Shown: one piece after another, positions 91-49,500 of the stretch | How positions within the stretch are numbered: position 1 is the stretch's first letter | How the letters are laid out: every line of letters starts with the position of its first letter | Source: Mytilus trossulus | Lineage: Eukaryota | Direction of reading: 5' to 3' | DNA: 64,000 bases | Assembly (NCBI RefSeq): GCF_036588685.1 | Contig: NC_086379.1 | Coordinates: 41,354,001 to 41,418,000, forward strand | Notes under the pieces: generated by a model | What the model was told of the DNA's origin: nothing | The model's input: only the letters and a program-made list of their open reading frames with translations | Database searches by the model: none | Translations under genes and position numbers: made by a program

Positions 91-3000
91 AAATAAATAT
101 TCAGACGAGTAAAGACATTTTACTTTATATCCTCGATGAAGTTGAAAAGATTACAAACATACAAAAGATTTCATCATTGGAATGCGAGACCAACATTAAC
201 CAAACAATGCTATCATGCACACGATGTGAAGAAAATCGTTGTCAATCGTAAGTGTTATTTGTTATTAATAATATTAATGAACAATACTCAAAGATACCAG
301 GCTTGGTTGGCTTTATAACTATTTTGATCTGTGTGTCATTGATGAATCTTATCTAGACGAAACGCGAGTCTGACGTATTAAATTATATGCTGGTACCTTT
401 GATAAATATTTAGATAAAATTCGTTTCTTTGATTTGAGAAGTTGTTTTGATATTTTACTAGCCTATGTCGCAAATTTTAAAACTCAATAATGACTCATAT
501 AAACTCAAAATGTGCATCCGTGCAAATTTTTTCCATCATCTTTAATTGAAGGGATTTGGTATGATAAACAAAGTAACAACTATCTCTCAAAGAACCGAGT
601 CACGTGGAAGTAAAGAACTACACATAAAGATCACCGTACGGACTTCCATAATGGATATTGCCCATGCTGTGTAATAGGCAATAAATAAATACCCCCGTTA
701 TAACTTTATGCAAACCAAAAAAAAAACGAAACCGAAAGCACCATCCTGAATTATGCTCATGAGACAATCAAACCAAAAAGAAATAAGACATATGGCACCG
801 ACAACCACGAATGAATGACATGTTTACGACTTCGGTCAGACACATATGAATGTGGCGGGGTTAAATATTTATGCCAGTGCTTAACTATCCCCCTGACGTT
901 AAATGTAGTATATTAGCTCGTCAGTATTCAAAGATAATAAAAATGTTGAATTGATACTCATAATCAATAAATTACTTAAAGGCTCAATAAAAGAACAGAG
1001 GATGAAAGTAAACATTGACGGTATCTTTATAGACGGGCACTATACGAATATAACCTTGAATTTTCGGATTTGATAACCAGTCTATAATAAGTTGTCAGCT
1101 TACTGACATTTTTACTGTCTTGTATCTTTAGATAACAGTTGTCGTCCGATGTGATATTTTACTAATCTGTTAATTTGTTCTTGTCCTGAACATGCATTCG
1201 ATATTTGGACATAAAGCAATCAACAATCACTAATAAAAAAAATTACTTAATCAAAAGAATACTTTTCTATATTCATTTTTCAGCACACCTCCACAAATAC
1301 ACGAACCGATGATTAAAGGATTGTTATATGAAGTAAACAAACCTATTACAAAAGCTGCTAAATTCGGACAGAATGTGGGGCAGTTGGTCAACAATCTAGA
1401 TAGAAAACTTAATTCTTGGTCTGAAGATATCACTTGGAAATTTAATGGATGGTTAAAACAAGCTGAGAAACATGCGAATAATGTTAAAAATGGTATTGTC
1501 GACACTGGTAAAAAAATTAAAACAGGTGCTGAGAATGCTTGTAAAAAAGTTTGGGGTGGAATTAAAAGTAAGATTATGATACGAATTTTAAGATATTATT
1601 ACAATTAGCTATAAACACATTTATCCGCTATTTTGTGCATTTTTCCTTGGATCTTTTTTTTGTGATAATTTTCATATCATGCTTCTCGCTTGAGATGAAA
1701 AAAATATCGCTAGAAACTAAGGAGGCCACGTGGCGTTGCTAACGAAATTGACATTGAAATTGACAACGTCGTCATAGGTAAAATAGCGATAAACAGATTA
1801 TCATTGGTCATCTCAACTCGATTGCCTTTCTCACTTTCGCTGTACCAGCTCAAGCGAGAAGATCAATCTCGTTGAGATAATCAACGATAATCTATAAATA
1901 TAATGAAGCAACGACAACCACTAAAACACAGGTTTCATGCCTGAAATATAAACAATTGCCTTATATTGTTTTTGTCACAAAAATATTACAAAATATGCAA
2001 AAGGTTATATATAAAATAAAAAGATAAATTACTTTGGATGCTCCTATGGTATCTTTCGCCTCATTTTCTTTTCAGTGATTCTCGAGGCCAAAATGTTTCA
2101 AAGTCCAACATTGTTTGATTAAATACAAGTTTCATGACTACTTGAACATTTTTCCAAAACAAATACTTCTTTAATCTCTCCATTAAATGATATATTTACT
2201 TTGAAGTACATGCAGCAATTTGACAACTAAACTATATATTACATTCAGGTATCTTTGGTAAACGGTCATCTAGACATGTGGATAAACGATGTGAACAAGG
2301 TTGTCCGCAATGCGATCGACTCGATACCAAGAGGAATAAACCGGATAAAGTGATACTATCTAGTAAGTAGAACAAAAAAAACAACTGACAGCAACCATAA
2401 ATACTGCTCTTCAAAGATTGCGGTACTTTGTCCCTGCGTACATATGTTTTATCTGCCAAAAACAAGTATCGATAACATTATTTCCTGGCAATTGCAATTC
2501 ATAGTGCCTAGATATATTGCGTTGTGCGATTGCAACACGTTTGCAGTTCTGTCAATAACCGACTTCTTGATTACCTAAAACATGTATGTGTCATATTTGT
2601 AAATATCAAAATTATTACAGAATGCACATATATAGCTTTTAACTATATTTCAGTAGTTAACCAGGAAGCTCTGCATTCAGATATATGACACAAAGCCTAA
2701 TCCATTTACTGTTAAACACGTTATTAGTTCCACTCTATTGAACTTGCAAAATTAGAATGGTTTTTTTTTTACTTCTACATAAATTCATCAAAATTGAATC
2801 GGAGTAATATCAGTGATAAATACATATGTTTATGTAATATGTGTTGGTAGGTTACTTTTTTGAGACATGAAAATGAAATTATCTAGAAATAATTCTCGAT
2901 GCTTGTTTTCAATTGTGTAAATATGTCACAATGATAAAATTGAGAAAGGAAATGGTGAATATGTGAAAGCGAAAACCACCCGACCATAGAGCAGACAACA

Positions 3001-8396: not shown

Positions 8397-8848
8397 GGGA
8401 AAATTTCCACAATATTATCGAATACACACTTGAGATGGCGTAAACAAGAAAATTTCCATTTCGATGTGGTTTCCCAAATATATATCTCAACAAAAATAAT
8501 AGATTTTAAATATGACAAGTACGTAATGACATTGTTTTACATATTCTTGTGGTTAAATTACACTAGTTCTGTGAGGTACATCTAAGGTTGGTTCAAGTTA
8601 GATTACACTTATTTAAATATTTATCTTTTAAGATATAAAAAAATATTTTATTAACAAAATGGATATTTTTTTTTATGATAATAGAAAATTAAAATGAAGG
8701 AAAACATGTATATATTAACTTTTTAAATCACATGAATCACCAATTATCCCTCATTTTAATAATAGATGGCTAACCATATCACGTAAATATTAATAGGATT
8801 GCTTTTTTGTAATTAATTCTTGGAACTATCGTAATTTTGCTATATAAA
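8397..8848 (+). promoter_or_regulatory. Gene B promoter: kB-like site, conserved blocks, STAT (GAS) motif and TATA box
   Basis: GGGAAAATTTCC 8397-8408; TCGATGTGGTTTCCCAA 8461-8477 and TGACAAGTACGTAAT 8513-8527 (both identical upstream of C); TTCTTGGAA 8817-8825; TATATAAA 8841-8848, about 50 bp before the ATG. Confidence 0.6.
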
Positions 8849-8894
8849 CACCAACAATCTGCTTCAAAATCAGCCAGCTTTTAAAACTTTTAAC

Positions 8895-11800
8895 ATGTTT
8901 ATCTCTCTACTCGTAGCAGTAGTCGCAGCACTTTGTTCCTGTAATGGAGAACTACTCTCTCTCCCACAAAATAACTTGGATAGTGAGTGAAACATTTTAA
9001 AATTGATTATTATACATGTAAATTTTATTATATCACGTCTTCTTCAACATTCCATTATGCAGTTCAGTTTATTAGTTTAGGTTACGAGCGTTCTTGGTAG
9101 AGGTTGTTTCAGAAACACGTGTTGTTAACAATGGTTAATGTGTATTAGTTTTTTTTCTAGTTTCTGTTTAGTGTCTTTAATCGATGCGCTAGGAGCCGAC
9201 ACACTGTTTCATTTATGTGTATTTATCCAATTGTACATGTATCTTTTTTTACTATTTATTATATGTACTTTAAAGCTGTTTGTCATAAATTATATGGGAT
9301 AGAGAATATATAAGTGAAATTAGCTAATTATTCTACATGCAAAGTCTGACAAACTGATTTCGTTCATGAAAAATTGCAACAAACGTTTGAATCAACTAAT
9401 GCGGTTTATTTTAATATTAGATGTGGTTTTTGATTTGTAGTCTTAATTGTACAGTCAAATTTAAAAATCACAATAATTAGAATAAAAAGATAAAAACAAA
9501 GGTTAAAAAAATTGGATAGGATATAGAAATTTTTACATTATTATAAATAAGTACAAAATTATAATGAAATGAATTCAATTTTTGCAAATAATTTTAAACA
9601 TAATATGTTTTCAGTAATAAACGACCAAGCACGAGCAGATATTGTAGATTATATCGTTGATGAAATTGATGCTACTGTAGAAGAGGAGAAGGTCCTATCA
9701 CTATCATGTGAAACCAAAGTTAACCAAACAATAAAGTCTTGTGATGAATGTGCCGGAAATATTTGTCCAGCGGTGTAAGTAGAAATGGTTTCATAGACTT
9801 GTATAAGAATATCTTTTTTGGTGCTTTCTTTTTTTTAAATAAGAAAATGTGATATTAATTTTAACTTTGATATATATATATGTTCAAATGTTTAAATATA
9901 GATCTTTATGAACCAAATTTCACGGTTGAAAGTTAGTTTTCTGTGTAGACTTTCAATGATTTACCTTGGATCTAGAAAAAAATTATCCTTTTTTAAGATC
10001 ATCAAACTGACATTGTTGCATTAAGGATAAGTGTGGCTTTCAAATTACTACAAAATCATATGTTGATAAAAAATACCACCAGGATTGGATGTTTCGTCAA
10101 CATATTAGTCAAACATGTTAAATATGATTTAACACAACACGTTAAATGTTTTATCTTAAAAGGCAATACATGAGTCTCTGAATTGGCTTTTTCAGTAATA
10201 GGGTTTCAGATTGAAATATTCATTTTTTAAAACTGAATATCTACGGTTACATATTTCGAAAACCATGCAAAGTTCACATTATTGCTTATTACCCATTATA
10301 TTGTCATTAGAGTATCCAAAATATTACACAAAAAGGACACATTTAACAGTAAATAGGCACATGAAAAAGTATGAGTATTTCTTATTTGAATTGAAGTTGA
10401 AACTATTTGTAATCCTTGTAGAGAACTTAGACAAGAGCGAAAGAAAATAGATTTAAGAAAGTTACTAAGTGTGATCCACAAACCTGTGGTACTTGTAGCA
10501 TCTATCGGTAAAAAAGTAGTAAAGGAAGCTGCTAGGTTTGGAAAGAGGATAGGAAAAGTGGTTAATAGAATTGGTGATAAAGTTAAAAGTACAGTAAAAA
10601 AAGTTAGAGTCGGAATTAAAAAAATCGGATCAAAAATAGGAAGTCATGTTAAAAGATTAGGAAAGGGAGTCGCTAAATTCGGCAAGAATATTGGACGAGG
10701 TGTTGCCAAAATAACCAAGAAGGTGGGACGTGGTATCAAGAAATTTGGACAAGGTGTCAAGAAAACTGGCAAAAAAGTTTGGAAGAAAATTAAAAGTATG
10801 TTATGATATACAGATTAATGTTTTAATTTAACTTATAATTGAATTGTCTGAAAAAAATCCGTTCCTCGTGATGATTAATGAAAATAACTCTTTCAACTTC
10901 ATGAAATGTTAATGAATAATTTGTCTTTCAAATATGTTTACTAACAGGTTTGTAAGTCTCATCAAGCTAGTTTTTCATTTTGTGTCCTTCCATATATTTT
11001 ATTATTAACTATTAATTTAACTTTATATTCAAGTTTTCAATTTGATTTGTCATGTACACTGTTTCTTAATAGCATTTGAAAATTTTGGTTTTCTCCCTTA
11101 CAGAAATATTTGGAAAACGATCAACCAGACACCTAATTGAAAAGCGTTGTGTAAGCAGTTGTCCAGTTTGTGACAAACTTGATAAAGACATATTCACGGA
11201 TGAACAAATAGTTGGAAAAAGTAAGTATAAAGTTAATATCTAGATAAGTTATATATTATATATAATATTATATAGTTTTATAGGTAATGACTCGATGCCC
11301 TTCACAAATGCTTGAAATTAACATTTGGTTAATGTTCGTCATCTTCAATTTTCGTAAATGGTGTCGTAATAACTTAGGTCATTAACCTTCTTGTTTGAAT
11401 TGTTTCTCATTTTTCATGGTGAGTCCTTTAATACTAGTATTCAACTTTACGGTATGGCATGGTCTCGTTGTTGAAGGTCGTAAGCCGTAAATGATCATAT
11501 TCACTTATTTGCATTCTTTTTATGCAATCATACCACATCAGTATATTTTTAAATTGTACTTTGTACCAAAAAAATATTAACAATTTCTTTTTTTTGTTGT
11601 TAAGTTAAAAGGCAATTTTAAGAATGCTATACGCGAAATTTAAATTAAAAATATATTTTCTTTTATAACTGTACATTTTCTGCTTTATTTGCAGTATGTG
11701 GGGCAAGTTTTGTTTCAAGACAGAAACAATTATATGAAAAAGTGAGAGGTTTAGAGGACACATACAACTATATAGTGTCCAATGCACCTGTAGTGACAAA

Positions 11801-12768
11801 GGTAATATTTTTCTTATAAGCCTGCTTATACAAATATGTATAAAGTCTAAGATGATGTGGTTAAAAAATTGTTTTATTGTTCATTTGTAACATAGAGGTT
11901 TTATTTTCCTAATACATGTATCATTTTCTTTTGACAAAATTGAACGTTATGTAAAAAAACAAAACATTATTATGTACTCATAAACAGATAGACAGTAAAC
12001 GTAAAAGATATGGCCACTTAGCGACAAAAAACCCCACAAAAACAGTCTTTTCACAGTGTATTGCATTTGAAATATATTATTCAAACTAAAACCGCACTGA
12101 TGATTAAATAAATCCATTTAAGAATTTAGATGAATTCCGTGTGTATGGTTTGAAATAATTTGCATATTGAATCAATATTATCTACAAAATCATATAAGCA
12201 TTGTAATCCCTTTAAGCTATACAGGCTATATTTTTCAAAGTAATTTGAAAATATAAAAAACTACTTGACTGTATTTTTTATAAGAATTCATACATCACAC
12301 AACAAACTTAAAGGCACTATATTTTGTTTGTTAGAGCTTCTTTGCCATAGATTTTTGAATTGGTGGTGTAACAGATCTATTTCTATTTTTGTGTGTAAAA
12401 ATATAAAAAAGACGCCAATCTACCAATCTAAAAAAGTCATTATAATTGATATTTTGTTGTATAACCATCCAAGAATTAAATACAGGATTTCCGTCCAGCG
12501 TTGAAAGTAAACTTTTTTTTAAAGATTGATCTTCTATAATGTCATTATTTGTAAACTGCTATAACCTGTACTTTATATTTTTCAGGTGGAATATGAAACA
12601 AGTAGTATTATTATAGTCAACGGGAAATTGGCATTTAAAAAGTCCTTTGTAACGTATCAAACGAACAAAATCAAGAGGAGATTTCAGCTTTCTGGACTAT
12701 TTGAAATCTCTAACATAGATGGTATGGCCATCAAAATATCAAAGGATATATTAAAGAAAATGCAATAA
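8895..12768 (+). CDS. Gene B: secreted precursor (342 aa) with a highly cationic amphipathic insert; putative antimicrobial-peptide precursor
   Basis: Exons 8895-8982, 9615-9774, 10422-10795, 11104-11220, 11695-11801, 12586-12768; GT-AG; total 1029 nt in frame. Signal peptide MFISLLVAVVAALCSCNG; CETKVNQTIKSCDECAGNIC; Lys/Gly-rich exon 3; KIFGKRSTRHLIEKRCVSSCPVC; ICG; VEYETSS...KKMQ*. Function is inferred. Confidence 0.92.
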
Positions 12769-18202: not shown

Positions 18203-21200
18203 ATGTTAATTCCTCATATCGTGGCCGTAGTTGCAGCACTTTGTACTTGCAATGGAGAATTACTGGCAATACAACAATATAAATTGGATAGTAAGTTATA
18301 CGAATAGTAAGAAATATAATTTATCTTTAGACCAATTCATTATTGAAATGTTTTACAATATTGTCATACCACGTGTACGTTAACAGTACTCTGAAATATA
18401 TATATTGTACAGTCGACACCATATATCTTAATGTTTATAAACATATATTTGCAATCTAATATCTTATTATTCCAGAAACAAACTAGACGTCTTAACATAA
18501 AAATACATACATAATAATATATAATAAAACAATAAAATCTCAATTATAAGGTTTTTTTTATTCTGAGTTATTTAATTAAAGTATACGTTGCTAACACTTT
18601 TTTACTTGAATGCACTATATGCCATATTTAGAACAGTTACACTAGTACTGTTCTGTACATACATATATTTAAACATCTATATTTACAACTAATTCATTGC
18701 CTTTTTTATGTTGTTACCGACCGGTCAAAATCTATAAAAAAAATTTGAGAAAATATCATTTTTGAAATTAGATTCGTTTATGACAATTGTCAACTATTGA
18801 TTTTGACATACGAAGGCAGTTTATTTATTTTGCTTAATTGAAATTTCTTTAATATATTTACTATTGAACAATAAAAAGAATTTAAACGTCACCTTTATTT
18901 TAGAAACAAGTTCCCGATCGCGAATAGAGTAAAGCAAACCTTACACAAACTTAAGTTTTAATAAGGTTAAGATATTATGAAATTAAAATGAATTGAAATC
19001 TTATATATTTTCAGTAATAAACGTCCAAACAAGCGCAGTTCTGTTTGACTATATCGTTGCTAAAATTAATGACACGGTAGATGAGGAGAAAAATCTTACA
19101 CAATCATGTGACACCAAAGTAAACCAAACTTTAAAGTCATGCGATGAATGTTTACGAAATGGTTGTGAACAGGTGCCAGAGTAGGTAGAAATGATTTCAT
19201 AATTTAACTTAAGAAATTCTTATAATATTGGAATTAAATGCATTATGCTGAACGCTTAATATTACAACACATGTTTAAAAACCTGATTCCTTTGAAGGAC
19301 TTCATAATGGCAATCATCATATTGAGGTTTGTCTCCTATATAGACTTACAACGAAACATCATCATCTTGAATTCAGAAATATGTCAATTTGTAGATAATA
19401 AAAGTATGTTTTTGCCGAATGTAAAGTCTTGAGTTTACTATTCGATGTTTTTAAACTGTTATTTGTTTGTTGGTCGTTTGTCTTAATTTTCCCTGGCGCT
19501 GCCAGTTTCTTTTCGACTAACGGCATCAGTCTTATTTATTTTGTTAACACCTTATCAAGATTTCGTCGAGTCCAAAAAAAGTTATTTAATCATCCTCCTG
19601 TTTAGGTCAAGTGCCGCAAAACTAAAGGTGGAGAAAAAATTTGAAAGTGAACATTACACTGTTGAAAGTTTAAAAGCTCAATTTTTTTTTTCATAAGTCG
19701 AAAAAAATCTTTGTTTGAAGTATAACATGTATTAACGATAGCTTTAAAACGTTTCTTTGAAACTTTTTATGCACAATAAATTGATCATACAATGTCCAGA
19801 TTACTCCAATTATGTTGTGGGTAACTTCCGAATTTATTTGGAGATAATGTGTGTAATACTATAGATCATTATAAAAAAAACCGAATATCAGATGATTTTC
19901 TCAGAATTTATTTATGATTGTGAGCTTTAATTTTTACAGAACACGTTGAAAGTTACATTTACCCATATTTGCATTGTGTAAAAAAATTGAAGTCGAGTGA
20001 AACACATGTCCGTTATTCGCTTGGGTTATAAAATATATGAGACACTCAATAACTTTGAATATTTACCTCTAGCATGGAAAGCTCAGATATGTCTCATAAC
20101 CGAACATAATGTCCGTAATTATTTTTCACGGGAAAACTTGCTTTTGTTAATGAAATCAGATATTTGCACTCATGTGTTTTTAATGTTTTTATTCAAATAT
20201 AACATATGACATAACTTTCGTATAACTTTAGATTTATTTTATAATATTTGTCGTTGGTAACATTTTTAATCTAAATAGAATATCTAGACCTGACTCGGAA
20301 CATTTGCTGAGACCAAACCCAGAAATGTTCCCGCTAATGATCAACACACCTATTCCAGATATAGCTAAATTAATCAAGGAAATTGGTAAAAGAGTTGGAC
20401 ATGAAGCTGCTAGATTTGGAAAGAAAATAGGAAAGGTTTTACAAAAACTAGGTGGAGGAGTCGGACGTACCATAAGAAAGGTTGGAGGAGTTCTAAAAAA
20501 AGTTAGAGGTGGGATTAAGAAAATTGGATCTAAAGTAGGAAGTCATGTTAAAAGATTAGGAAAGGGTGTCGCGAGAGTCGGCAATCATATTGGACAAGGT
20601 GTTGGTAGAATCGGCAAGCATATTGGAAAAAGTGTAGGCAGAATCAGCAAGAATATTGTACGAGGTGTTGGCTCAATCGGAAAAAATATTGGACGAAGGG
20701 TTGGCAGTATCGGAAAGAATATTGGACGAGGCGTTGGCAGAATCGGTAAGAATATTGGACAAGGCGTTGGTAGAATTGGAAAAAATATTGCACGAGGTGT
20801 TGGCAGATTTGGCAAGAATATTGGACGAGGTGTAGGAAGATTGGGCAAGAAAGTTGGACACGGTATTAAGAATACTGGCAAGAAGATTTGGAGTGGATTT
20901 AAAAGTATGTAATAAATAAAAAGATAAATAAGTTAACTAATTCATATTTTCATTAATCGAAATCAAATAATGTAGTTTATATATTTAATCTATAGATTTT
21001 CAAGTAATATTAAATAAGTTCCCACTTTTGAATTCGCCTGTTTTATCATCAAAAATTAATCCTAATTTGCAATACAGGGTTTCAGTCGATTTATTTATTG
21101 TTTTTCTATTATAGTAATTGAATCCCTTGGTTTTTTCCATTGCAGAAATATTTGGAAAACGATCCACACGACATTTAATTGCGAAGCGTTGTTTTCACAG

Positions 21201-25206: not shown

Positions 25207-28200
25207 ATGATGACTTCATTCTCAATGTATCTGTTTTGTTTTTGTTTCATCAACTTCTCGTTTACATTAGCTGAAGGAAGATATAAGCGTCAAGCAATAA
25301 ACTTGACGGAACTTGATATAACCAGTGTCAGAAGTAAGTTATGAGATTATTTTTTTTTACAAACTGCATGCACATTTTATCTCTCTGTCTGTTGAGATTT
25401 AACATGATATACAAAATTCTTTAAAAATAATATCATAAAGAAAGAGCACTATTTTAAATATGTTTAAGTAAATATGTTTTTTCATCACCTAGTTTTGCAA
25501 TTTTAAAATTTGATCATGATGATGATGGATGACTTCTGAACGTTCAACTGCAAAGATTTTTTTTGCGGTTAAGATTAAGTATATTTCAAATACTCGTCGA
25601 ATTAAAAATCAGAGTGATTTTTTTTTTATAATGCCAGAAAGGAAGTTAACCACCAGTTGCAACAATTAATTGAAAGTAACAGATAATTAATCTGATTTTT
25701 CTGCTCATAAAACTTGTTTCTTCAATAAATACGCCTTATCATGTACGCTCGAGGTAAAAAAATTGGAGCATTCAAAACCCTAGAACAGATCAGTCCACAT
25801 CGGTTCAAAGGTAAACTTAGACGCATGTCGTTGTTTTATTTTGTATAAGAACAATGGTTATATTTACAAACCGAGTGAATGGTCGTAAATGACACTAAAT
25901 ATACAATATGGCAATCTGCGGTTTGTTTCTATTAATTCTACAATAGGCATTAAACATGTTAAAAGAGGGGCGAAAGATACCAGAGGAACAGTCAAAACTC
26001 ATAAATCGAAAACAAACGGACAACATCATGGCTAAAAATGATAAAATGAGAAACAGACAAATAAAAGTAAACAAGAAACAACATAGAAAACTAAATACTG
26101 AGCAACACGAACCCCACCAAAAACCATTAAAGTTTCTATATTGTACGAAAAATATTAGGAATAGTTAGAATTTTTCTTTCAGATATTGACAAGGAAGCCA
26201 GGAAACAGCTGATGTTCCTGATAGCAGATCGTTTAAATGATACTGTTGTTACACAATCTGATTTGGCTGGAACCTGCCAAAGTAAACTTAACAGTACAAT
26301 AGATGGATGTACTACGTGTAAAGCAGATATATGCGCTAAGTATGTGTATTTTGTATAATAGAAGAATTATTTTAAAACAAAAGTTTTGTAAGAATTAACC
26401 AGAATATTATCTAAATCAACTATATTCAAAGGATACTGTTAGATATATACAAACTTCCCACAATGATATAACGTTCCGTTAAAATAATCTTATAAGCGTA
26501 CTAGTACGCTGAAATTACTAGTAACATATGCCAATTACACATCAGCGGATTAATATGTTGATTCGTTGGTTTTTTCCTAAAAAGTATTGAGAATTCCTTC
26601 GGAACATACATATATGTCAAACTTGGTAAATGAGAGTTGAGAACCAGTCTATTCTTCTTCGCACACGCTATCAAAACCAATAAATAAACTCATCATATAT
26701 TCCAGGATAAAAATTTAAGTATATATGACTGTTCGGTCATGAGATCTTCACTTGGGACTTTATTTTACCTTTTGCAAATTTAAATCCGAGCGTCACTGGG
26801 ATAAATGGAGATGCTCTGTAAGAATACGTAAAATCTCTTTAAAACGTTTTTTTTTGCATTTGAGCGTCACTGGCTATTCTTGTGTTTTTGTCTTATATGT
26901 TCTCCCATCTTTTAGTATTGTAGTCCTGTCATGTTAAGTTGTCGTTTTAATGTTTAATTAAATATTGCCATAAAAGCCAAAGGTTTTGCATGCTACAAAA
27001 CCATGTTCAAACCACCCTTTTTTTCTTGAAATGTCCTGTACCAAGTCAGGAAAATGGCCAGTGTAAATTATAGTTTTGTCTTAGTTCTCCTCTTATATTT
27101 GGTGTTTTTCCCTCAATTTTAATTTCTAACCCGGTTTTTTTTTTTTTCAATCGATTTCTGAATTTCGAACAGCGGTATACTACTGTTGCCTTTATTTGCA
27201 AATTGAATGATTGGTAAAACGGTAAACAATTGTTTTGTACTTGTAATTTTGAGGTAAATTACATAGTAAAGAAGATCGAATTCAAATCAATGTCATTTCT
27301 TTTTTACCTACAACGTTATATATAATAAGTATCTAATATTTGAAATAACAAGTATTTTCTACTTTAACCGTTTTTGCCACATCTGAGGGGGAATTTTGGG
27401 TTCTCAATGCTCTTCAATTTTATACTTGTTTGGCTTTCTAACTGTTTTGATCTGGGCGTCACTCATGAGTCCTTTGTAGACGAAACGCGCGTCTGTAGTA
27501 TTAAATTATACGCATTATACCTTTGATAACTATTGACGGCATTTGTAATAAAAAATAAAATGCATAATTTACTGACAAATATTTATACCGTATAGCAGGT
27601 TATTTTCGCGGGTATTAATTTTTCGCAATTTTCATTGAATAAGGTATACGAAATATTTTGATGGTTGTTATTTTGGCCAATCTTGTATCAATACCTTCGC
27701 TGGTGCATTTTTTAATTGGCGGAATTTATTTTTTTCGATTATGTTCTATCCGCAAAAATAAGCGAAAATAACCATCTTTACGGTACCAGACAATCACTAA
27801 TTTATTACACATCAGGATGTCACATAATAACAATTGAATGTTTACATTAATTTTGTTTCAGTGTAGAAATTCCATCTTTGTCTGAGGAAGTGTTTAATAG
27901 AATTTCAAATGGCAACTACCGTCCGATTACCTATGCCGGGGAGGTTATGAAGGAAATTGCTCAATGGGCAGTTGGAGCTAAAGACTTCTTGGGAGATCGA
28001 ATGGGGCCGTTTCTTAAAAACATAGGAGAAGATCTGCTAGAAGTAGCTAAGGTGCTTGTAAAAGGTGGAAAATATATAGCAACACCTGCAGTTAATGCGT
28101 TCCAAACACTTGGAGGAACAATTGCGAATGCCGGAAGAGAGATAATTCAATCTATTAGTGGTGATGTAAACAATGTCATAGGCGATTTAAAGGGTTTAGT

Positions 28201-31200
28201 TGGAAAGCCTTTCGAAGACTTTGAAAATGCATTGAAAACAGTTCGTCAGACAGTATCAGAAAAGGCACCTGTCGTTTTAAATGCCATCAAAGATGCAGTT
28301 TTACCTGTCTGGGAAAGTAAGATTTATTCAAAAGATATTTAAAGTAGTATCAATCTTTTTAATATATATCTGCGCTAAGTATGTGGATTTTGTCAATAAG
28401 AATAGAATAAGTTATCTAATGTTTCACCAGCCCAGTTACCAACTGTGCTTCGGGACGTCTAAGTGAAACTTGCTGTTATGTAATATTTAAATCTTTGAAA
28501 ATCCAGGAAGTATCTGACTTTGTTTTTTTGGAAACGTTGTTGTATCAGCTATTCGTTGTTCGGTTAAGGTGTTTGCTTTTTAATTATTAGTTAAACATAA
28601 GGGACAATGATCAATAATGCTATCATTACTGAAAATAGACAAGTGCCATCATTAGGGAAAACTAAATGGTATGAATATCAAATTTAAGTCATACAGTTTT
28701 TCTGAATTGACAAGAAACCCCAAGAAACGATGTACTGTTAGAACCGGTTCCATTAGTGAAGTTGGAATTTGCAATAGAGGTCATCGGCAGCTTTGTATGG
28801 CGCTCGTGCTTGTTTTTGTTTCTGTAAAGTATTTGTCTGTTTGCTCTTCTTTTTAAATGATTTTGACATGATGCTGCATCTCTCTTAAGGTTATGTTATT
28901 GATTTCCCTCGATCGTTGATACTAACCGTCGTTTTACACAAACTGACTTTGAAGAAGGGAATGAATACGACGAATTGTATGGTTCTCAGTCTGATAAATG
29001 ACTTTATAATATTTCTGCCTAAAAGATGTGTTATAATTTTACAAACGGCTATGACCTTCATGTGTACCGTTTAGGAACAATGTTTGGCATTTTAGTCTAT
29101 TTTCTATTTAAAGAAATTCCTCCGTTAAAAATATCAAACCCCTTATAGAGAAAAGTACACAGATAATAAAATATCGACCATTTTTTTCAAGACTGTGTTG
29201 TAAGCGACAGGAACATGCAGATCATAAATCAATTGGTTGAATTTTTTCAACATATTATTATAAATAGTAACCAACGATGTTGAATTGTGTCAATCATAGA
29301 TTTAAGTTCAGATATATAACACCATACTTAATTCTATAGAGTAAATAGCCAAATTTTGGCACATGAGTTGACGTATTCTTAACATTTATTACAGAGACAC
29401 TTGGAAAATTGTTCAGGAGAAAACGTTGTGTATCATCTTGTCCGTCTTGTGACAAATTGGATATTAAGAAAAACACAATAAGTCAGATCATCGATTCAGG
29501 TAGGTATTTGGTTATATTAGCCTCCAAGCATAAGGAGAATAGAACTCGTATGAATTCATTTTCAAATAATATTGACTCATTAAAATCTAAAATGCCCCTA
29601 CCATGTCTTTTAGGCAAATTCATAAATCATTAATTGCTATTAGCATTTTGTTAACATGTTTACATTTCCGATACTGAAGGGGTGTCTCTTGAATAAAAAA
29701 AAACTCATCATAGATACCAGGATTTAATTTAGTATATACGCCAGACGCGCGTTTCGTCTACAAAAGACTCATCAGTGACGCTCGAATCCAAAAAAGTTCA
29801 AGAGGCCAAATAAAGTACGAAGTTGAAGAGCATTGAGGACCAAAATTCCGAAAAGTTTTGCAAAATACAGCTAAGGTAATCTATGCCTGAGGTAGAAAAT
29901 CCTTAGTATTTCAAACAATTCATCGTCCTGAATATGCATGAAATATTTCCCACTGGACGTTAAGCAACCAACAATCAATCAAACAATTCAAAAATTTGTA
30001 AACAGTAAATTTATAAAGATAACCATATCAATGACAATTCATGTCAGCACAAAAAGTAAATGGTGTTTAGCATTTCGTAACAAGTATGAAAAAGTTAACC
30101 AGTGTAAAGGAGTATACTTCTGAAGAAGTTTAAGTTTTCCCGTAATAGATGGGACTGCGTCTGGTATATTATGTTCAATTTCGATGAATCAAAAGCTGAA
30201 TATCATAAAATATTTTCCAAGTTCAGTATTTAATAGTATTTAATCAATTTATGATAGTGAAGCTTACATGAAATTTGAATTATAATCAGCAAACAAATAA
30301 CCATCAGATTTATTTCTATCCATTCTAGGGAAGCCTTTATTTATCATAATCAATTCTTCAATATAAAATATGATTTTGTGAACAATTTAGCGATCCTATT
30401 TAATGTTATTTACCTTAGCACTTTTTTTCATAGTTTGTGGTGCAGATACAACAAAACAAAAGAAACAAGCAATGACCGAAATAACATACCTCAAAGACCT
30501 GTACAATAAAACAAAAGACAACGAACAGATAACAAAGGTATGTACCTATAACGTCGTTCATAAATACAATTTGTATTTTACTCAACTTAACTATACAATA
30601 TTACAAACTGAAAAGGCAAAGATTTGATTTGTTTTTTAAGAAGGTTACTTGATTTAAAAGTTTATATATTTTCAACAGCTTTTCATAAACATAAAATGAA
30701 TACTTTGTCGCAAGAGTAACCATACTTGTGCTATTTTCTCCTGTGAAATTATGTCGATCTTGGCTTTAGTCATGACAGTTTTTCCCTGTTCTGTGAATGT
30801 CTTAAGAGTATGAAAGCTTATGTGGAAGTACAGCAACATATTTTAGATTGTACGCCGGAACGATTTCGCATCATCTGTTGAGTACTTAAATATAAAAAAA
30901 GGCTACCTGTTCAAGAACTATTATCATCTTTTAAAACGGCATGAGCTTGAGATGGCACTGTTGTGACGCAGTGTTACTTCTGTTTAATCATACAATAATG
31001 TTATATTACCTCATTTACCAATTAACTAATCGAGATTTAAAATTGGACGAAATGACGTTAGGTTTGTTTTAATGCCATGAACAACCCTTTCGTGAAAATA
31101 CTAGTACTACGAAAATAAGTAAATCCCGCCATGTGTTAAGTAATGACGTTTTACCACGATACATAATTCTTAAAACCAACAAATGAATACATGTCGTTGA

Positions 31201-37215: not shown

Positions 37216-40200
37216 ATGACTTCAATCTCAGTGTATCTATTTTGTTTTTGTTTTCTTTCCTTCTCGTTAACTTTCGTGGAATGCAGAAATAACCTCAGAG
37301 CAATAAATGTTGCGGAACTTGATGTTAACATTGTCAAAAGTAAGTTAAGATTAATATTTTACAAACTGCATTTAAATTTGATCTCACTGTTTGTAGAAAT
37401 TCAACATACAAAATACTTCAAAAATCATATCATCAAGAATACAAGTACTTTAAATGTCTGTTCCTACTTACGGAATATCTTTGATGTTTTGCCTTTAAAG
37501 AACTTTAATGATGATTTTGACGAGGATGATAAATGACTATTTAACGTTAACTACAAATTGTTTTGTAAAATATTTGTTTGTTATGACAGTGATTACGATT
37601 ATAACACATTGCTAACTGCTGTACCCCTATTTTTGACAATTTCGTTGTCATTATATGTGACTGTTATACAAGTGAGAGGTTTGGCTAGCTATAAAACCAG
37701 ATTGTATCCACCATTTTCTGCATATGAAAATGCCGGTAACAATTCAGGAATATGACAGTGGGTATGAATTCGTGTTATGTGTTTGAGCTTTTGGTTTTGC
37801 CATTCGATTAGGGTCTTTCCGTTTTGAATTTCTTCTCGATATTTTGTTTTTTAAACGTTTTAAATGCATATTCGAGAGGATTATAAACGATGAGTTAATA
37901 CCCTGATTGTACTACTGAGTTGGATTTGTAACGTGTTACTTCACATGATGAAATCCGACTAGGAGACATTGCATACACATTATTCTGACCCCACGCCGAT
38001 CATTCTTGGGTCTTACTCCTTAATCCCGCGCGTTTATTTATCAAGTTAGGTATTTTACTTGTTGGTGTAAGAAATTATTTTCCCTATAATGAAACTCCAT
38101 AAGAAACCTAAAAAGTTATCAAAGTTACCAGGATGATAATTGAATACGCCAGACGCGCGTTTCGTCTTCATAAGATAAAAAAAAGTTACAAAGCCAAAAA
38201 AGTACAAAGTTGAAGAGCATGGAGGACCCACAAATTTTAAATGTTGTGCCAAATACGGCTAAGGTAAATTTATAAAGAACACAAAAAACTAGGGACACCA
38301 AGAAAATCAAATATCAGGTGAGATAATTTATGCAGGAACTATCAAGTACAATTAAATAATCGTAGACAGCTTAAAAGTTACAGTTAAAATCATGCCACCA
38401 CGACAGTCCTACAGCAACGGCAACAACTAAGGGAAGTAATAATTAAAAAGAAACATAGTATACTGCTCATGAAACAGTTGTGTCAAGGAAAAGAGTTTTA
38501 TTCTGGTATGCTTGGGGCAGAAATTGCAGTGCATGAAAAAAAAATAAACCAGGAGTAGATTTGTCAAAATCGGGTTAAAAGTCAATTTGGTCAGAGAGAA
38601 TTGCAACTTTACAAAGCAAGTGAAGTCAGGTTGTAAATGGCATCAAATACACAGTATGGTAATCTGCGGTTTATCAAGGTATTAGAAGAACACTTGATCA
38701 AATCATTGCTACTTTCCTATTACAATAATTTTATGATCCGATAAGGATTAAAGTGATTAAAAAGAAAATGTTAGTACGTTTAGCTTGAATTTTCAGGTAT
38801 TGACAAGGAAGCTCGGAAACAGTTGTTGTTTCTGATTGCAAATCGCTTAAATGATACTGTATCTACACAATCTGTTTTGGCGGGAAACTGCCAAAATAAA
38901 CTAAACAGTACAATAAATGGATGTTCTACCTGCAAAACAGATCTGTGTGCTAAGTAAGTTATGTACAATTAAAGGTTATCATGCTAAAGATAATGAGATA
39001 AATCAGCAAATTCTGAAACAACGACAACAAGAATGATGCTGCCACTGTTTCAGAGTTTGATAAATTAGAGGCAATAGTATTTCAAATCTCAAAAACACAA
39101 TGCAAAGATACAAATTAATGTAAAAACAAAGCATGCGCAATTCAGAATTTGTCAACAAAACGTTTATGCATACAATGCCCGCCATGACAAGGATAAAATT
39201 CGAATTTCACAGTCCAGGCTATGTGTAAATTTCTCCACAAATCTATGTCTTCCATGAATTATTTCTAAATATTAGCAGCGTTTCTCTGCTAAGTAAGAAC
39301 TTAAGGGGTAGTTAGGTTTAAGGCGTTTTTAATAACTGATACCTATTGCCAGAAAATCACGTATATATTACATATCAGGAAGGCACAATTTAACATAAAT
39401 GCTAAATTTGTTATTTTAATTGATTTTGTTTTAGCGTACAAATTCCATCTTTTTCTGAGGAAGTGCTTAGTAAAATTTCAATAGCCAATTACCGTCCGGT
39501 AACCTACGCCGGAGAGGTAATGAAGGAAATTGCACAATGGGCAGTTGGAGCTAAAGACTTCTTTGGGTATCGATTGGGTCCGTTTCTTGAAAACATAGGA
39601 GATGATCTGATAGAAGTTGCTAAGGTGCTTATAAAAGGCGGGAAATATATAGCATCACCTGCTGCTGAAGCGTTCCGGTCACTTGGAGGATCAATTACGA
39701 AAGCCGGAAGGGAGATAATTCAAGCTGTAAAGGGGGATGTAAACAATATTATAGTCAATTTAAAGGGGCTTATTGGTAAGCCTTTCGAAGACTTTGAAAA
39801 TACATTGAACACAGTTCGTCAGATAGTATCAGAAAAAGCACCTGTCGTTATAGATGCTATAAAAGATGCAGTCTTACCTGTTTGGGAAAGTAAGTTTTCA
39901 ATTGAAAATATATTCAAATTAGTGCCAATCTCTTTTTGTAATCTTTATACAATTTTTGTAAGACAATAAGGCAATAAGATTTCTAGAATGAATTACATTG
40001 TGTATAACCTGCTTTGTTACCAACTGTGCCTTGGTACTGGCTTAAAAATATGAATACTGTCTTTTGTGAAACTTGCTGTTATGGAATATTAAAATCACTG
40101 GAAATCTTGGAATCTCACAGTGGCATTTAGTTCCGTTTTATCAGCCTTATCATTGTTTTAATTTCAAACATTGAATACTACATAAAGTGCATTAAAATGG

Positions 40201-46500: not shown

Positions 46501-49500
46501 GAAGTGAAACAAAAACAAACGCCAACTACATGACAGGAATACAGCACAAACAAACGCCAACTACATGACAGGAATACAACACAAACAAACGCCAACTACA
46601 TGACAGGAATACAGCACAAAAAAACGCCAACTACATGACAGGAATACAACACAAACAAACGCCAACTTCATGACAGGAATACAACACAAACAAACGCCAG
46701 CTACATGACAGGAATACAGCACAAACAAACGCCAACTACATGACAGGAATACAACACAAACAAACGCCAACTTCATGACAGGAATACAGCACAAACAAAC
46801 GCCAACTACATGACAGGAATACAACACAAACAAACGCCAACTTCATGACAGGAATACAACACAAACAAACGCCAGCTACATGACAGGAATACAACACAAA
46901 CAAACGCCAACTTCATGACAGGAATACAGCACAAACAAACGCCAGCTACATGACAGGAATACGCACAAACAAACGCCAGCTACATGGCAGGAATACAGTG
47001 CAAACAAACGCCAGCTACATGACAGAAATACAGCGCAAACAAACGCCAGCTATATGACAGGAATACAGCACAAACAAACGCCAGCTACATGACAGCAATA
47101 CAGCGCAAACAAACGCCAGATACATGACAGGAATACAGCGCAGACAAGCGCCAGATACATGACAGGAATACAGCTCGAACAAACGCCAGCTACATGACAG
47201 GAATACAGCACAAACAAACTCAGGAACACTGAGCACAAACAAACTCAGGAACACTGACACAAATAAATAATATAATAGTACATCACAACATGTAAACCAC
47301 AACAGAATAACAACACATATCTTCCATTAGCGACAGCACGGGACGCCACAAACAGTGACGTGTATTATATAGATGTTATAGGTAGTAACAAAAAAAATAG
47401 ACGTAGAAAGAGTGTCAATATGGCAACCTGTACCTAAAACAAATGGCGTTAAATAAATCAACGTCCACATATAACGTTGGGTATAATTATTTTGTTGTAT
47501 AAGAAGTACGGAAGTAAATTTATTTTACAAAATTCATTAATTTGTTGTTCATTGTAAGAGTACAGAAGTGACTAGGACTACTGTATGATAACATTGGTAT
47601 CTTATTACTTTAAACTCGCCCACAATGAATCATTAAGACAACTTTTACATTGTATATGTAGCATTCATATGTATAATCATTTTGGTGAAATGCCATTTTA
47701 TCAAAAATGTTTTAATTTTTCAGAGCTTGATATTGAAGTTAGACGAGAAATTATAATAATGATCGTAGAACAAATCAACAAAACAGCAGAACAACAAAAA
47801 CAGTTGTCAAAGACTTGTGAAGTTAAAATCAATGGCTCTATCGACAACTGTAAAGCTTGTAATCAAGACTTGTGTGTCCCGTGAGTTGGTTTTATCATGA
47901 TTTTGAATATTTCTATACACAATGTTCTTAAATATTATAGAATTAAGAAACGAGCTCCTGTCATTGTTGTAAAACATGGAAGAATTGTTAGCAACATAAA
48001 ATTTAACGAAAACATTAGTAATTGTGTAGGGAAGATAATCATTGTTAAGTTATAAAATGTATATACCTTAGAATAGAAGAACGTCTGAGTCAGTGACAAC
48101 TTTACAACAGAATAGAAGATATACAGTAGATGAATCATACTTTCACGGTTGTGTGTTTTTTTAGATAAAATGTGTTGTTGTGTAAGTTTACTCACGTAAA
48201 TGAGACATATATATACAAAAATGTATATTTGTTTTTAGACAGCCACCTCCTGTTTATGAAGCTATTCTGATAGCTGTTGGAACAGAGGCCCTCAAACCAG
48301 TCCTTGCTGCAGGAGAATTTGTAAAATCTATTGGATCACAATTGTCATCCACTACCAAATTCCTAGGAGGCGAAGCAGGCGAATTTGTTAAAGACCTTGG
48401 AAGCGTTTCTAAAAACATTGGCAATGGTTTAAAAGATGGCGTAAATAAAGCTTTGGATACGATAGGATCTGGTTTTGAAAGTCTTGGCAATAAATTCGCA
48501 GATCTCGGTAACAGCTTGGCTTCTGGAGCAACTGATCTAGCAAACGGTCTAGGAAGTGGTACAACAGATTTGTTGAATGGACTTGGATCAGAATTTACAG
48601 GTCTATCTGGCCAGCTTGGAGGTGGATTAGACTCACTAGGTGGTTCACTTACGGATCTTGGTAACAAACTCGTGGATGGAGTCAAGAATGTAGGAAATTC
48701 GATTGGAAATACATTTGGTCGTGAGTTATACTACGCAAAACATACTAGATATCCATACCATGTAATTATTTCTCTAGAATGGGTAGTTTTTAATTACAAT
48801 GATACCGCTCCCGTTATTTCAGGAGCGAGCACAACTTTTAACATAGAAATAATTAATTAAGTTACATGTATATAAGACATATAACCATCATACACATTCA
48901 TATTAATAAGTCAATTCACAATACGACAATGTGACGTTCTTTACTTTAAAATGGTGTCATACTGTGATAGATGATTGTATTTAAAATTTTGGTTTTCAAA
49001 TGAATATTGAACATATTAGAAAAAAAAAAATTTGAATAATTATAATTAATTTTAAGTATTTTAATGACAAAATGATAGAAAAGTGTCGAATTTTAAATAT
49101 GTTCCTGTCCATTATACAGATATTTTTGGTAAACGTTGTGTACAGACATGCCCAGTATGTGAAAAACTTGATATAAAGAAACACACAAAGGAAGAAGTTT
49201 TACAATCAGGTATTATTTTTCATTTTATAGACTGTATTAGTTTTAGTGCAATGTTGAGTCTATAGATTTTCTATCTTTCTAATCTTTAAGTGTTGGTTTT
49301 GCATTGATGTTGGTCAAATAGGCTTTGTATATCCATTTCTTTTTTTAAACTCTGCTGTGAGATGTCTCTTTGACAATAATACTACATCTCATTATATACT
49401 TCACTAGAAAATGTATATTTAAAGTGCAAAATTATAATTAATATTAACTTCTTTTTGTCTCTTATTGATAATTGTCTTTTTTTGTGTATTATTATTAATA

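What the first reader, a model, noticed from the sequence alone, without database searches (positions are those of the whole stretch)
10422..11145. Gene B insert looks like a polyprotein of cationic helical antimicrobial peptides
Seen: about 42 K/R versus 5 D/E in 124 aa (hand count), no Cys, and Gly/Val/Ile/Lys periodicity. Candidate processing sites divide it: RQER (R-x-x-R), AARF-G-KR, SHV-KR, KIF-G-KR. These would yield KKIDLRKLLSVIHKPVVLVASIGKKVVKEAARF-amide, IGKVVNRIGDKVKSTVKKVRVGIKKIGSKIGSHV, and the 49-aa LGKGVAKFGKNIGRGVAKITKKVGRGIKKFGQGVKKTGKKVWKKIKKIF-amide. Exon 2 of B is acidic (about 12 D/E versus 4 K/R), like a neutralising propiece. Known: Gly/Lys-rich amidated helices typify cecropin-, dermaseptin- and piscidin-class AMPs. 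Activity is inferred.
Basis: partly seen in the sequence, partly recalled or inferred. Interest (0 to 1): 0.85.

Follow-up and report, generated by a model that had tools for sequence, protein, structure and literature searches.

The report
Cationic tail exon of clusterin-like mussel protein
The stretch is a real exon of an uncharacterised secreted mussel protein and encodes a very lysine-rich membrane-seeking helix, probably the processed, amidated tail of a two-chain clusterin-like protein and possibly a defence molecule, rather than a string of separate antimicrobial peptides.

Summary
Window 10422-10795 is exon 3 of a six-exon gene identical to Mytilus trossulus LOC134727040 ("uncharacterized protein", 342 aa). 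It has 42 K/R against 5 D/E in 124 codons, no Cys, and strong helical amphipathicity (period 3.6-3.67 residues).

- The exon is not an insert. All seven tandem paralogues in the window carry a homologous exon in the same splice phase. It is always amphipathic, but its net charge runs from -6 to +44.
- Internal dibasic sites occur at chance frequency. There are no spacers, and the helical register runs unbroken across the proposed cuts. Two of the four proposed sites are lost in the M. californianus orthologue.
- Only the terminal F-G-K-R site is conserved family-wide, so cleavage and amidation there are likely.

The family is found across bivalves, has no Pfam model, and no paper on it was found. 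Cysteine clusters flank the variable exon, and the two innermost cysteines are present or absent together. A confident AlphaFold model has human clusterin as its best PDB match, at weak Z (7.2-7.4).

Most likely the protein is a convertase-cut, disulfide-linked two-chain protein with a polycationic tail that binds anionic membranes. Antimicrobial activity and expression of gene B remain untested.

The parts
8895..8982 (+). Exon 1 of gene B: start codon and hydrophobic signal peptide
   Evidence: Matches residues 1-29 of P0158 (XP_063447496.1) exactly and has a GT donor. A TATA-like box lies about 45 nt upstream (read).
9615..9774 (+). Exon 2: acidic long helix with the N-terminal Cys cluster (C-x10-C-x2-C-x4-C) and a conserved N-x-T sequon
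   Evidence: Helical at pLDDT 79-90 by 10-residue block in the AlphaFold model of P0158.
10422..10795 (+). Exon 3, the finding: variable amphipathic payload, 124 codons, net charge +37, period 3.6-3.67 residues
   Evidence: Against the copy 9 Mb away there are 12 nt differences but only 3 conservative residue changes, while the flanking introns are 90-94% identical.
10429..10446 (+).
   Evidence: Present in M. trossulus B, its second copy and one M. galloprovincialis protein. Replaced by non-R-x-x-R sequence in P0178 and P0179, where only K-K persists.
10543..10548 (+). Internal K-R, after A-R-F-G
   Evidence: K-K instead in all C-type proteins and in M. californianus B. No break in the helical register here.
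10651..10656 (+). Internal K-R, after S-H-V
   Evidence: Conserved in all B-type and C-type proteins, but it lies inside their most conserved block. No break in the helical register.
10796..11103 (+).
   Evidence: It is 90% identical to the second copy, less than the exon.
11104..11220 (+). Exon 4: F-G-K-R (11109-11120), a 7-residue connecting piece, E-K-R (11139-11147), then the C-terminal Cys cluster C-x3-C-x2-C
   Evidence: The Phe is invariant and the basic run nearly so across 27 family members.
11695..11801 (+). Exon 5: last Cys and the long C-terminal helix
12586..12768 (+). Exon 6: beta-sheet plus terminal helix domain, and the stop codon
   Evidence: pLDDT 89-93 by 10-residue block, 78 for the last two residues.
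1284..1567 (+). Homologous payload exon of paralogue A (94 aa, net +8)
20279..20904 (+). Homologous payload exon of paralogue C (208 aa, net +44, 33-nt repeat expansion)
27862..28316 (+). Homologous payload exon of paralogue D (151 aa, net -3)
39435..39889 (+). Homologous payload exon of paralogue E (151 aa, net -2)
48239..48720 (+). Homologous payload exon of paralogue F (160 aa, net -6)
58570..59069 (+). Homologous payload exon of paralogue G (166 aa, net -3)

Best explanation
The stretch is exon 3 of gene B, which is Mytilus trossulus LOC134727040 (342 aa). Gene B is one of seven tandem paralogues belonging to an uncharacterised family of secreted proteins found across bivalves.

Every member has the same plan:
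- a signal peptide;
- a long helix ending in a Cys cluster;
- one hypervariable exon encoding an amphipathic helix with hendecad (11/3) periodicity;
- a conserved Phe-Gly-dibasic site, often followed by a second dibasic site;
- a mirror-image Cys cluster, a second long helix and a small beta/alpha domain.

This is the layout of vertebrate clusterin.

Inferred mechanism:
1. The two Cys clusters are disulfide-bonded to each other, so the payload is a closed loop.
2. A prohormone-convertase-type enzyme cuts at F-G-K-R (and at E-K-R, removing a 7-residue connecting piece).
3. Carboxypeptidase and the amidating enzyme leave a Phe-amide end.
4. The product is a two-chain protein whose N-chain carries the payload as a long flexible tail.

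In genes B and C this tail has become polycationic (+37 and +44), with a narrow hydrophobic face. Such a tail would be disordered in solution and would fold onto anionic membranes or other polyanions. That makes a host-defence, antimicrobial-peptide-like role plausible.

Shown: the gene model, the family, the composition, the periodicity, purifying selection and conservation of the site.
Inferred: the cleavage, the amidation, the disulfide pairing, tethering as opposed to release of the tail, and any antimicrobial activity.
For: Gene model:
- Exon by exon the window matches P0158 with canonical splice sites.
- The orthologues P0161, P0003 and P0001 show the same exon junctions.

Family:
- Members come from Mytilus, scallops, oysters, Pinctada and Sinanodonta, and all are named 'uncharacterized'.
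- In alignments A1 and A2 the Phe of the F-G-K-R site and three Cys are invariant.
- Some members occur on 1.1-1.3 kb contigs that hold the whole coding sequence. These must be spliced transcripts.

Payload:
- All seven window paralogues, and 22 of the 27 family members scanned (the five exceptions are short payloads or faulty regex boundaries), peak at 97-101 degrees. Net charge ranges from -14 to +38.
- Against the second copy, exon 3 shows 3 conservative replacements in 12 nt differences, while the introns are 90-94% identical.
- Where it aligns, the payload is highly conserved with the M. californianus orthologue.

Two-chain reading:
- The Cys just before the payload and the Cys just after the processing site are both present in 14 sequences and both absent in 10. 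There are no mixed cases.

Clusterin likeness:
- I noted the Cys layout and central cleavage as clusterin-like before any search.
- The AlphaFold model of the short-payload member P0005 has pLDDT 84.
- Foldseek ranks them 2 and 8.
- Clusterin biology, namely furin cut, antiparallel disulfides and functional tails flanking the cut, is taken from PMC12527946.

AlphaFold model of P0158: payload residues 94-177 are helical at modest confidence, and the last third is disordered.
Against: - No RNA or peptide evidence for gene B itself. No B-type or C-type protein in the searched collection comes from a transcript assembly.
- The P0158 model returns only generic helical bundles.
- Pfam Clusterin gives no hit at E <= 1 on any exon or any full-length member. 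It finds nothing significant in the genome.
- The joint presence or absence of the Cys pair may reflect a single evolutionary event.
- Most family members have neutral or acidic payloads, so the ancestral role is not that of a cationic antimicrobial peptide.
- F-G-K-R is a dibasic site, not the strict furin R-x-[KR]-R motif.
Confidence: 0.55

Rival explanations
1. Exon 3 is a polyprotein that convertases cut at R-Q-E-R, F-G-K-R, V-K-R and F-G-K-R into three free cationic helical antimicrobial peptides of 33, 34 and 49 residues. Two of them would be amidated.
For: - The motifs exist.
- Each proposed peptide is cationic (+7, +9, +18) and amphipathic (z = 2.4 to 7.2).
- Two of the sites have Gly before the dibasic pair.
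- V-K-R and the terminal F-G-K-R are conserved in all B-type and C-type proteins.
Against: - Dibasic pairs are at chance frequency for this composition.
- There are no acidic or other spacers.
- The helical register is continuous through both internal sites.
- R-Q-E-R is lost, and the first G-K-R becomes G-K-K, in M. californianus B. It is G-K-K in all C-type proteins.
- The first peptide contains a hydrophobic motif shared with acidic family members.
Confidence: 0.13
2. The whole payload is released as one polypeptide of about 120 residues, polycationic and amidated. This needs an extra cut just after the N-terminal Cys cluster (R-Q-E-R or K-K) in addition to the conserved F-G-K-R cut. The clusterin-like core would then act only as a carrier or pro-region.
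For: - R-Q-E-R-K-K lies 6-11 residues after the fourth Cys.
- K-K at that place is kept in all B-type proteins.
- The N-domain of gene B is the most acidic in the family (-9). In the AlphaFold model it packs against the first payload helices.
Against: - The R-x-x-R motif is not conserved even within Mytilus B-type proteins.
- C-type proteins and the rest of the family have no basic site there.
- K-K alone is a poor convertase site (general knowledge).
Confidence: 0.15
3. The family, gene B included, has a non-immune role typical of amphipathic-repeat proteins. Examples are lipid transport or an extracellular chaperone role like apolipoproteins and clusterin, or binding of polyanionic matrices such as mucus, shell, byssus or the egg coat. 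The charge of B and C would only tune the ligand.
For: - Most members have neutral or acidic payloads.
- The payload profile hits apolipophorin III (E 3e-7) and apolipoprotein A-IV (E 9e-5) among PDB sequences. It gives sub-threshold Pfam ApoLp-III and ApoC-I hits.
- The tails of clusterin serve chaperone and lipid binding (PMC12527946).
Against: - The apolipoprotein matches are below the curated cut-offs and probably reflect composition and periodicity.
- A net charge of +37 to +44 with a narrow hydrophobic face is extreme for a lipid carrier.
- There is no Tyr or DOPA-type adhesive signature.
- No tissue data are available either way.
Confidence: 0.17

Closest known systems
Clusterin (apolipoprotein J; Pfam PF01093; PDB 7ZET and 7ZEU)
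   Same: - Secreted.
- An N-half helix with a Cys cluster and a C-half with a mirror Cys cluster.
- Convertase cleavage in a flexible central region whose flanks are the functional hydrophobic or amphipathic tails.
- A C-terminal alpha/beta domain.
- Best structural match to the P0005 model (biology).
   Different: - No detectable sequence similarity.
- About half the size in the core.
- Three or four Cys pairs instead of five.
- The central region is a long hendecad amphipathic repeat of 32-195 residues.
- A Gly-dibasic amidation signal replaces the R-I-V-R type furin site (the motif is recalled from memory, not checked with a tool).
Linear cationic alpha-helical antimicrobial peptides (cecropins, dermaseptins, magainins, piscidins)
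   Same: - Lys- and Gly-rich, Cys-free and strongly amphipathic.
- Predicted to be disordered until bound.
- A C-terminal Gly-Lys-Arg amidation signal.
   Different: - The segment is about 120 residues rather than 20-40.
- It lies in the middle of a 342-aa protein with disulfide clusters.
- There is no conserved N-terminal release site.
- The precursor architecture is unrelated.
- Activity is untested.
Exchangeable apolipoproteins and other 11-mer amphipathic repeat proteins (apoLp-III, apoA-IV, alpha-synuclein, perilipins, LEA proteins)
   Same: Hendecad (11/3) periodicity and a narrow hydrophobic face flanked by Lys. The profile gives weak hits to apoLp-III and apoA-IV.
   Different: The hits are below the curated thresholds. 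The charge is far higher, and the repeat is embedded in a Cys-clustered, convertase-processed scaffold.
Myticalins (Mytilus linear Cys-free antimicrobial peptides)
   Same: Same genus. They are described as one of the very few molluscan antimicrobial peptides without Cys (PMC12294457 abstract). They are cationic.
   Different: As far as I recall (not tested here), myticalin precursors are short: a signal peptide, a mature peptide, a dibasic site and an anionic extension. They have no Cys-cluster scaffold and no hendecad helix.

Membership tests
Clusterin (PF01093) | Match to the Pfam Clusterin model above its 23.6-bit cut-off | tested here: not met
   No Clusterin hit at E <= 1 for any exon of gene B, for P0001 or P0002, or for the 18 members of A1. 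The genome-wide six-frame search gave one 14.8-bit chance-level match elsewhere.
Clusterin (PF01093) | Three-domain fold: coiled coil, disulfide domain and C-terminal alpha/beta roll | tested here: inconclusive
Clusterin (PF01093) | Secretory signal and internal convertase cleavage into two chains | not testable with these tools
   The sequence motifs are present and conserved: a signal peptide, and F-G-K-R, R-R-K-R or G-R-R-R-R before the second Cys cluster. Cleavage itself is not shown.
Clusterin (PF01093) | Five antiparallel interchain disulfides between the two Cys clusters | tested here: inconclusive
   There are 4+4 or 3+3 Cys rather than 5+5. The innermost pair is present or absent together in 24 of 24 sequences, as expected for antiparallel pairing. 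This may be a single evolutionary event, and no bond was mapped.
Multi-peptide (polyprotein) antimicrobial peptide precursor | Repeated mature units separated by conserved processing sites or spacers | tested here: not met
   Dibasic counts equal shuffle expectation. There are no spacers and the register is continuous. Two of four proposed sites are not conserved.
Linear cationic alpha-helical antimicrobial peptides | Net positive charge and amphipathic helix | tested here: met
   Net charge +37. The spectral peak is at 100 degrees, and z reaches 7.2 against shuffles.
Linear cationic alpha-helical antimicrobial peptides | A short free mature peptide with measured antimicrobial activity | not testable with these tools
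   No peptide or activity data. No paper on this family was found.
Exchangeable apolipoproteins (PF07464, PF01442) | Match above the curated Pfam cut-off | tested here: not met
   ApoLp-III scores 15.6 bits against a 36.3 cut-off on exon 3. The best E among 18 members is 0.001 for ApoLp-III and 0.0019 for Apolipoprotein; the one Apolipoprotein score seen, 13 bits for P0002, is far below its 90-bit cut-off.

The most novel reading that the evidence does not exclude
Bivalves possess an undescribed effector family built on a clusterin-like, convertase-cut, disulfide-linked two-chain scaffold. Its single hypervariable exon works as an exchangeable amphipathic 'warhead'. In the Mytilus B and C genes it has evolved into an amidated polycationic 11/3 helix of about 120-200 residues that kills or coats microbes. 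This would be the first helical antimicrobial-peptide-type defence molecule in mussels, and it would be evidence that the clusterin architecture predates vertebrates.
Probability: 0.3. Interest if true: 0.8.

Novelty: new variant of a known kind. Interest (0 to 1): 0.6.

Why it matters
Known mussel antimicrobial peptides are almost all compact and disulfide-stabilised, and Cys-free linear ones are rare (PMC12294457). A secreted protein that displays or releases a +37 amphipathic helix would add a new class of candidate defence molecule in an aquaculture species.

More broadly, the family has no Pfam model and no paper on it was found. It spans at least five bivalve lineages and concentrates its variation in one exon, in length, charge and repeat number. 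This makes it a natural experiment in how amphipathic tails are tuned.

If the clusterin likeness reflects common descent, the origin of this extracellular chaperone and apolipoprotein scaffold would move outside vertebrates. The predictions are directly testable by mass spectrometry and simple biophysics.

Tried and rejected
- **Read evidence.** No read-level evidence of expression or splicing could be obtained. Those places were sent to no search tool afterwards: Rfam was run only to 11240, scripts used pieces up to 11103, and locus L001, which spans them, was never used.
- **Sequencing runs.** All listed runs are only guessed to be RNA. The best holds 34% of the sampled words, close to the exonic share of the stretch. 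I treat this as suggestive only.
- **Pfam.** Scans of exons and of full-length members gave only sub-threshold, composition-driven hits such as Chlorosome_CsmC, Collagen_mid, Senescence and ApoLp-III.
- **PDB by sequence profile.** Hits were tape-measure proteins, apolipophorin III, designed bundles and haemagglutinin HA2. All fall on the payload. I rejected them as periodicity matches.
- **ESM Atlas.** No usable hit.
- **Fold search with the gene B model.** Only generic helical bundles, including pore-forming toxins (AhlB, ClyA, Hbl). I rejected these as an effect of low-confidence payload helices packing on the N-helix.
- **Literature.** Searches for clusterin in mussels or bivalves, for six gene identifiers, and for helical amidated mussel peptides found nothing on this family.
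- **Rfam.** Nothing on either strand of 8000-11240. The mechanical minus-strand ORFs at 10296-10481 and 10644-10772 have no support.
- **Spliced model.** I did not search or save a joined model. Exons were searched one at a time by reference, and full-length analyses used database proteins returned by the tools. In one search each exon was only compared in turn with P0158.
- **Profile-profile test against clusterin.** Not possible, because no tool supplied clusterin sequences.
Full report
**What is at the coordinates**

The window is AT-rich eukaryotic DNA with introns. Window 10422-10795 is bounded by an AG acceptor and a GT donor. It translates to 124 codons with 32 K, 10 R, 2 D, 3 E, 17 G, 18 V, 12 I and no Cys.

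Walked exon by exon, the six exons match database protein P0158 residue for residue, with canonical splice sites. The exons are 8895-8982, 9615-9774, 10422-10795, 11104-11220, 11695-11801 and 12586-12768. P0158 is XP_063447496.1, "uncharacterized protein LOC134727040 [Mytilus trossulus]", 342 aa.

I did not search or save a joined spliced model. Exons were searched one by one by reference, and full-length work used proteins returned by the tools.

**It is real and constrained**

A second copy of the array lies 9 Mb away on the same contig. Against it, exon 3 differs at 12 of 374 nt but at only 3 residues (V/I, I/L, K/R). The flanking introns are only 90-94% identical.

The M. galloprovincialis orthologue P0161 differs by a few conservative changes. 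The M. californianus orthologue P0179 keeps the aligned part of the payload highly conserved, with only a handful of substitutions in the last ~60 payload residues, but with 51-aa and 7-aa length differences.

No Rfam family matches either strand of 8000-11240.

**Periodicity**

- The hydrophobicity spectrum of the exon has a single dominant peak at 100 degrees.
- Residue-class autocorrelation peaks at lag 11, then 18, 22, 29, 7 and 4. DNA identity peaks at lags 33 and 54.

This is a hendecad (11/3) amphipathic helix with a narrow hydrophobic face, a Gly-rich flank and a broad Lys/Arg face.

**It is not an insert**

tblastn of gene B's exons against the window finds seven tandem paralogues, A to G, all on the + strand and all with the same six-exon plan. 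Each has a homologous exon 3 with the same acceptor and donor phases.

| Paralogue | Payload length (aa) | Net charge |
|---|---|---|
| A | 94 | +8 |
| B | 124 | +37 |
| C | 208 | +44 |
| D | 151 | -3 |
| E | 151 | -2 |
| F | 160 | -6 |
| G | 166 | -3 |

The five paralogues tested (A, B, C, D, F) peak at 98-100 degrees. Amphipathicity is therefore the conserved property and charge is the variable one.

**The family**

A full HMMER search and word-based searches found relatives in the following, every one named "uncharacterized" or "hypothetical":
- Mytilus galloprovincialis, M. edulis, M. californianus and M. coruscus;
- scallops (Mizuhopecten, Pecten, Argopecten, Ylistrum);
- oysters (Magallana);
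- Pinctada;
- the unionid Sinanodonta.

No Pfam model matches above threshold. No paper on the family was found.

Some members sit on 1.1-1.3 kb contigs that hold the complete coding sequence, so they are spliced transcripts. No such transcript-derived record was found for B-type or C-type proteins.

Alignments A1 and A2 show the common plan described under the best explanation. Across 27 members the payload is 32-195 residues long with net charge -14 to +38. Strongly cationic payloads occur only in Mytilus B and C, in two scallop proteins and in a Pinctada protein.

**The cleavage sites**

- The terminal F-G-K-R is the one site with strong support. The Phe is invariant, a basic run follows in every member, and Gly precedes it in most. 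This is the classical signature of dibasic cleavage followed by amidation.
- In many members a second dibasic pair follows a few residues later, just before the first Cys. A short connecting piece would then be excised.
- The internal sites are not supported as a design feature.
  - With 34% K/R, the observed counts (KR 2, RR 0, KK 9, RK 2) equal shuffle means (2.6, 0.7, 8.0, 2.6).
  - The phase of the hydrophobic moment drifts smoothly from residue 10 to the end, with no jump at either internal K-R.
  - There are no spacer peptides.
  - R-Q-E-R is replaced in P0178 and P0179. The first G-K-R is G-K-K in P0179 and in all C-type proteins. Only V-K-R is conserved, and it lies inside the block that B and C share best.
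- The beginning of the exon is a hydrophobic motif (L-L-x-x-I-x-x-P-V-V type) shared by acidic family members too.

**Two chains held by disulfides**

The Cys that immediately precedes the payload and the Cys that immediately follows the processing site are both present in 14 sequences and both absent in 10, with no mixed case. This is what an antiparallel disulfide closing the base of the payload loop predicts.

The distribution could stem from one loss event, so it counts as one observation rather than 24. If the pairing holds, cleavage at F-G-K-R opens the loop but leaves the payload attached to the core through the N-terminal cluster, unless a further cut occurs after that cluster.

**Clusterin likeness**

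From the Cys spacing, the central cleavage site and the C-terminal segment I noted a clusterin-like layout before any structural search.

- AlphaFold on A1, with the short-payload member P0005 first, gave a confident model (pLDDT 84, pTM 0.70). It has a long helix, a disordered payload, a second long helix, and a small sheet with a terminal helix.
- Foldseek ranks them 2 and 8 of 350,542 chains, at E 0.09 and 0.24.

These scores lie within the tool's stated noise band, and the margin over the next hit is small. The full-length gene B model gives only generic helical bundles (pLDDT 70; payload residues 94-177 helical at modest confidence, the last third disordered). Pfam Clusterin detects nothing in the family or in the genome.

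I therefore claim a shared architecture as likely and homology as open. The clusterin paper describes a furin cut, five antiparallel disulfides, and two flexible tails flanking the cut that carry chaperone, receptor and lipid functions (PMC12527946). The bivalve payload occupies that position.

**Mechanism and odds**

My best reading (0.55) is a convertase-cut, disulfide-linked two-chain secreted protein whose N-chain ends in an amidated amphipathic tail. In B and C the tail is polycationic. It should be unfolded in solution and fold on anionic membranes or polyanions, which suits a defence role.

Rivals:
- release of the whole tail as one polypeptide of about 120 residues (0.15);
- a non-immune apolipoprotein-like, chaperone-like or matrix-binding role (0.17).

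The acidic exon 2 is the conserved N-helix of the scaffold, not a dedicated propiece. It is, however, most acidic in gene B (-9).

**Limits**

Expression and splicing of gene B therefore rest on the RefSeq model and on orthologues. One run holds 34% of the sampled words of the 3.3-kb gene stretch, about the exonic share, but its nature is only guessed. Places 11241-11280 were sent to no search tool afterwards. Cleavage, amidation, disulfide pairing and antimicrobial activity are all inferences.

**Verdict**

The antimicrobial-polyprotein interpretation is partly supported: a cationic amphipathic segment with an amidation signal, yes; a polyprotein, no.

What is there is a member of an undescribed bivalve family with a clusterin-like plan and a hypervariable amphipathic exon. 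I rate it a new variant of a known kind, with interest 0.6.

Noticed in passing
G000:C7:50382213-50402256 (loci L002, L004, L005): A second copy of the A-B-C part of the array lies about 9 Mb away on the same contig. Its B copy is 98% identical in protein over exon 3, and its introns are 90-94% identical. The RefSeq model P0159 (521 aa) fuses the A-like and B-like genes of that copy.
   Followed up: partly
window 20279-20904: The payload exon of gene C is 208 aa with net charge +44. Identity is strong at lag 33 nt (0.58) and 66 nt, so it carries an in-frame 11-residue repeat expansion. Repeat number differs between the window copy, the second copy and the M. galloprovincialis and M. californianus proteins.
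   Followed up: partly
P0178, P0179 versus window 10422-10795: B-type proteins come in a long form with an extra 51-residue amphipathic block (M. galloprovincialis LOC143046950, M. californianus LOC127708553). The short form seen here also occurs in M. galloprovincialis as VDH98837.1. Payload length is therefore polymorphic or paralogue-specific within Mytilus.
   Followed up: partly
window gene C, exon 4 near 21148-21249; protein P0183: RefSeq isoform X2 of gene C (LOC134727041) skips exon 4. It thereby lacks the F-G-K-R site and the C-terminal Cys cluster. Whether this is a real isoform or a modelling artefact is unknown.
   Followed up: no
alignment A2 (family-wide): The Cys just before the payload and the Cys just after the processing site are present together (Mytilus, Sinanodonta and others) or absent together (scallops, oysters, Pinctada) in 24 of 24 sequences.
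   Followed up: yes
whole genome G000: The Pfam Clusterin model finds no significant match anywhere in this 1.3-Gb genome in six frames. The best is 14.8 bits at E 7. Mussels therefore seem to lack a canonical clusterin gene, though exon-by-exon sensitivity is low.
   Followed up: partly
family members P0008, P0013, P0010, P0064: Many neutral or acidic family members end their payload in a His-rich motif (I-G-H-x-I-G-H-I-F before the basic site). One member has 12 His in a 76-residue payload. This hints at pH- or metal-dependent behaviour of the tail.
   Followed up: no
I worked beside them and sent them to no search tool.
   Followed up: no
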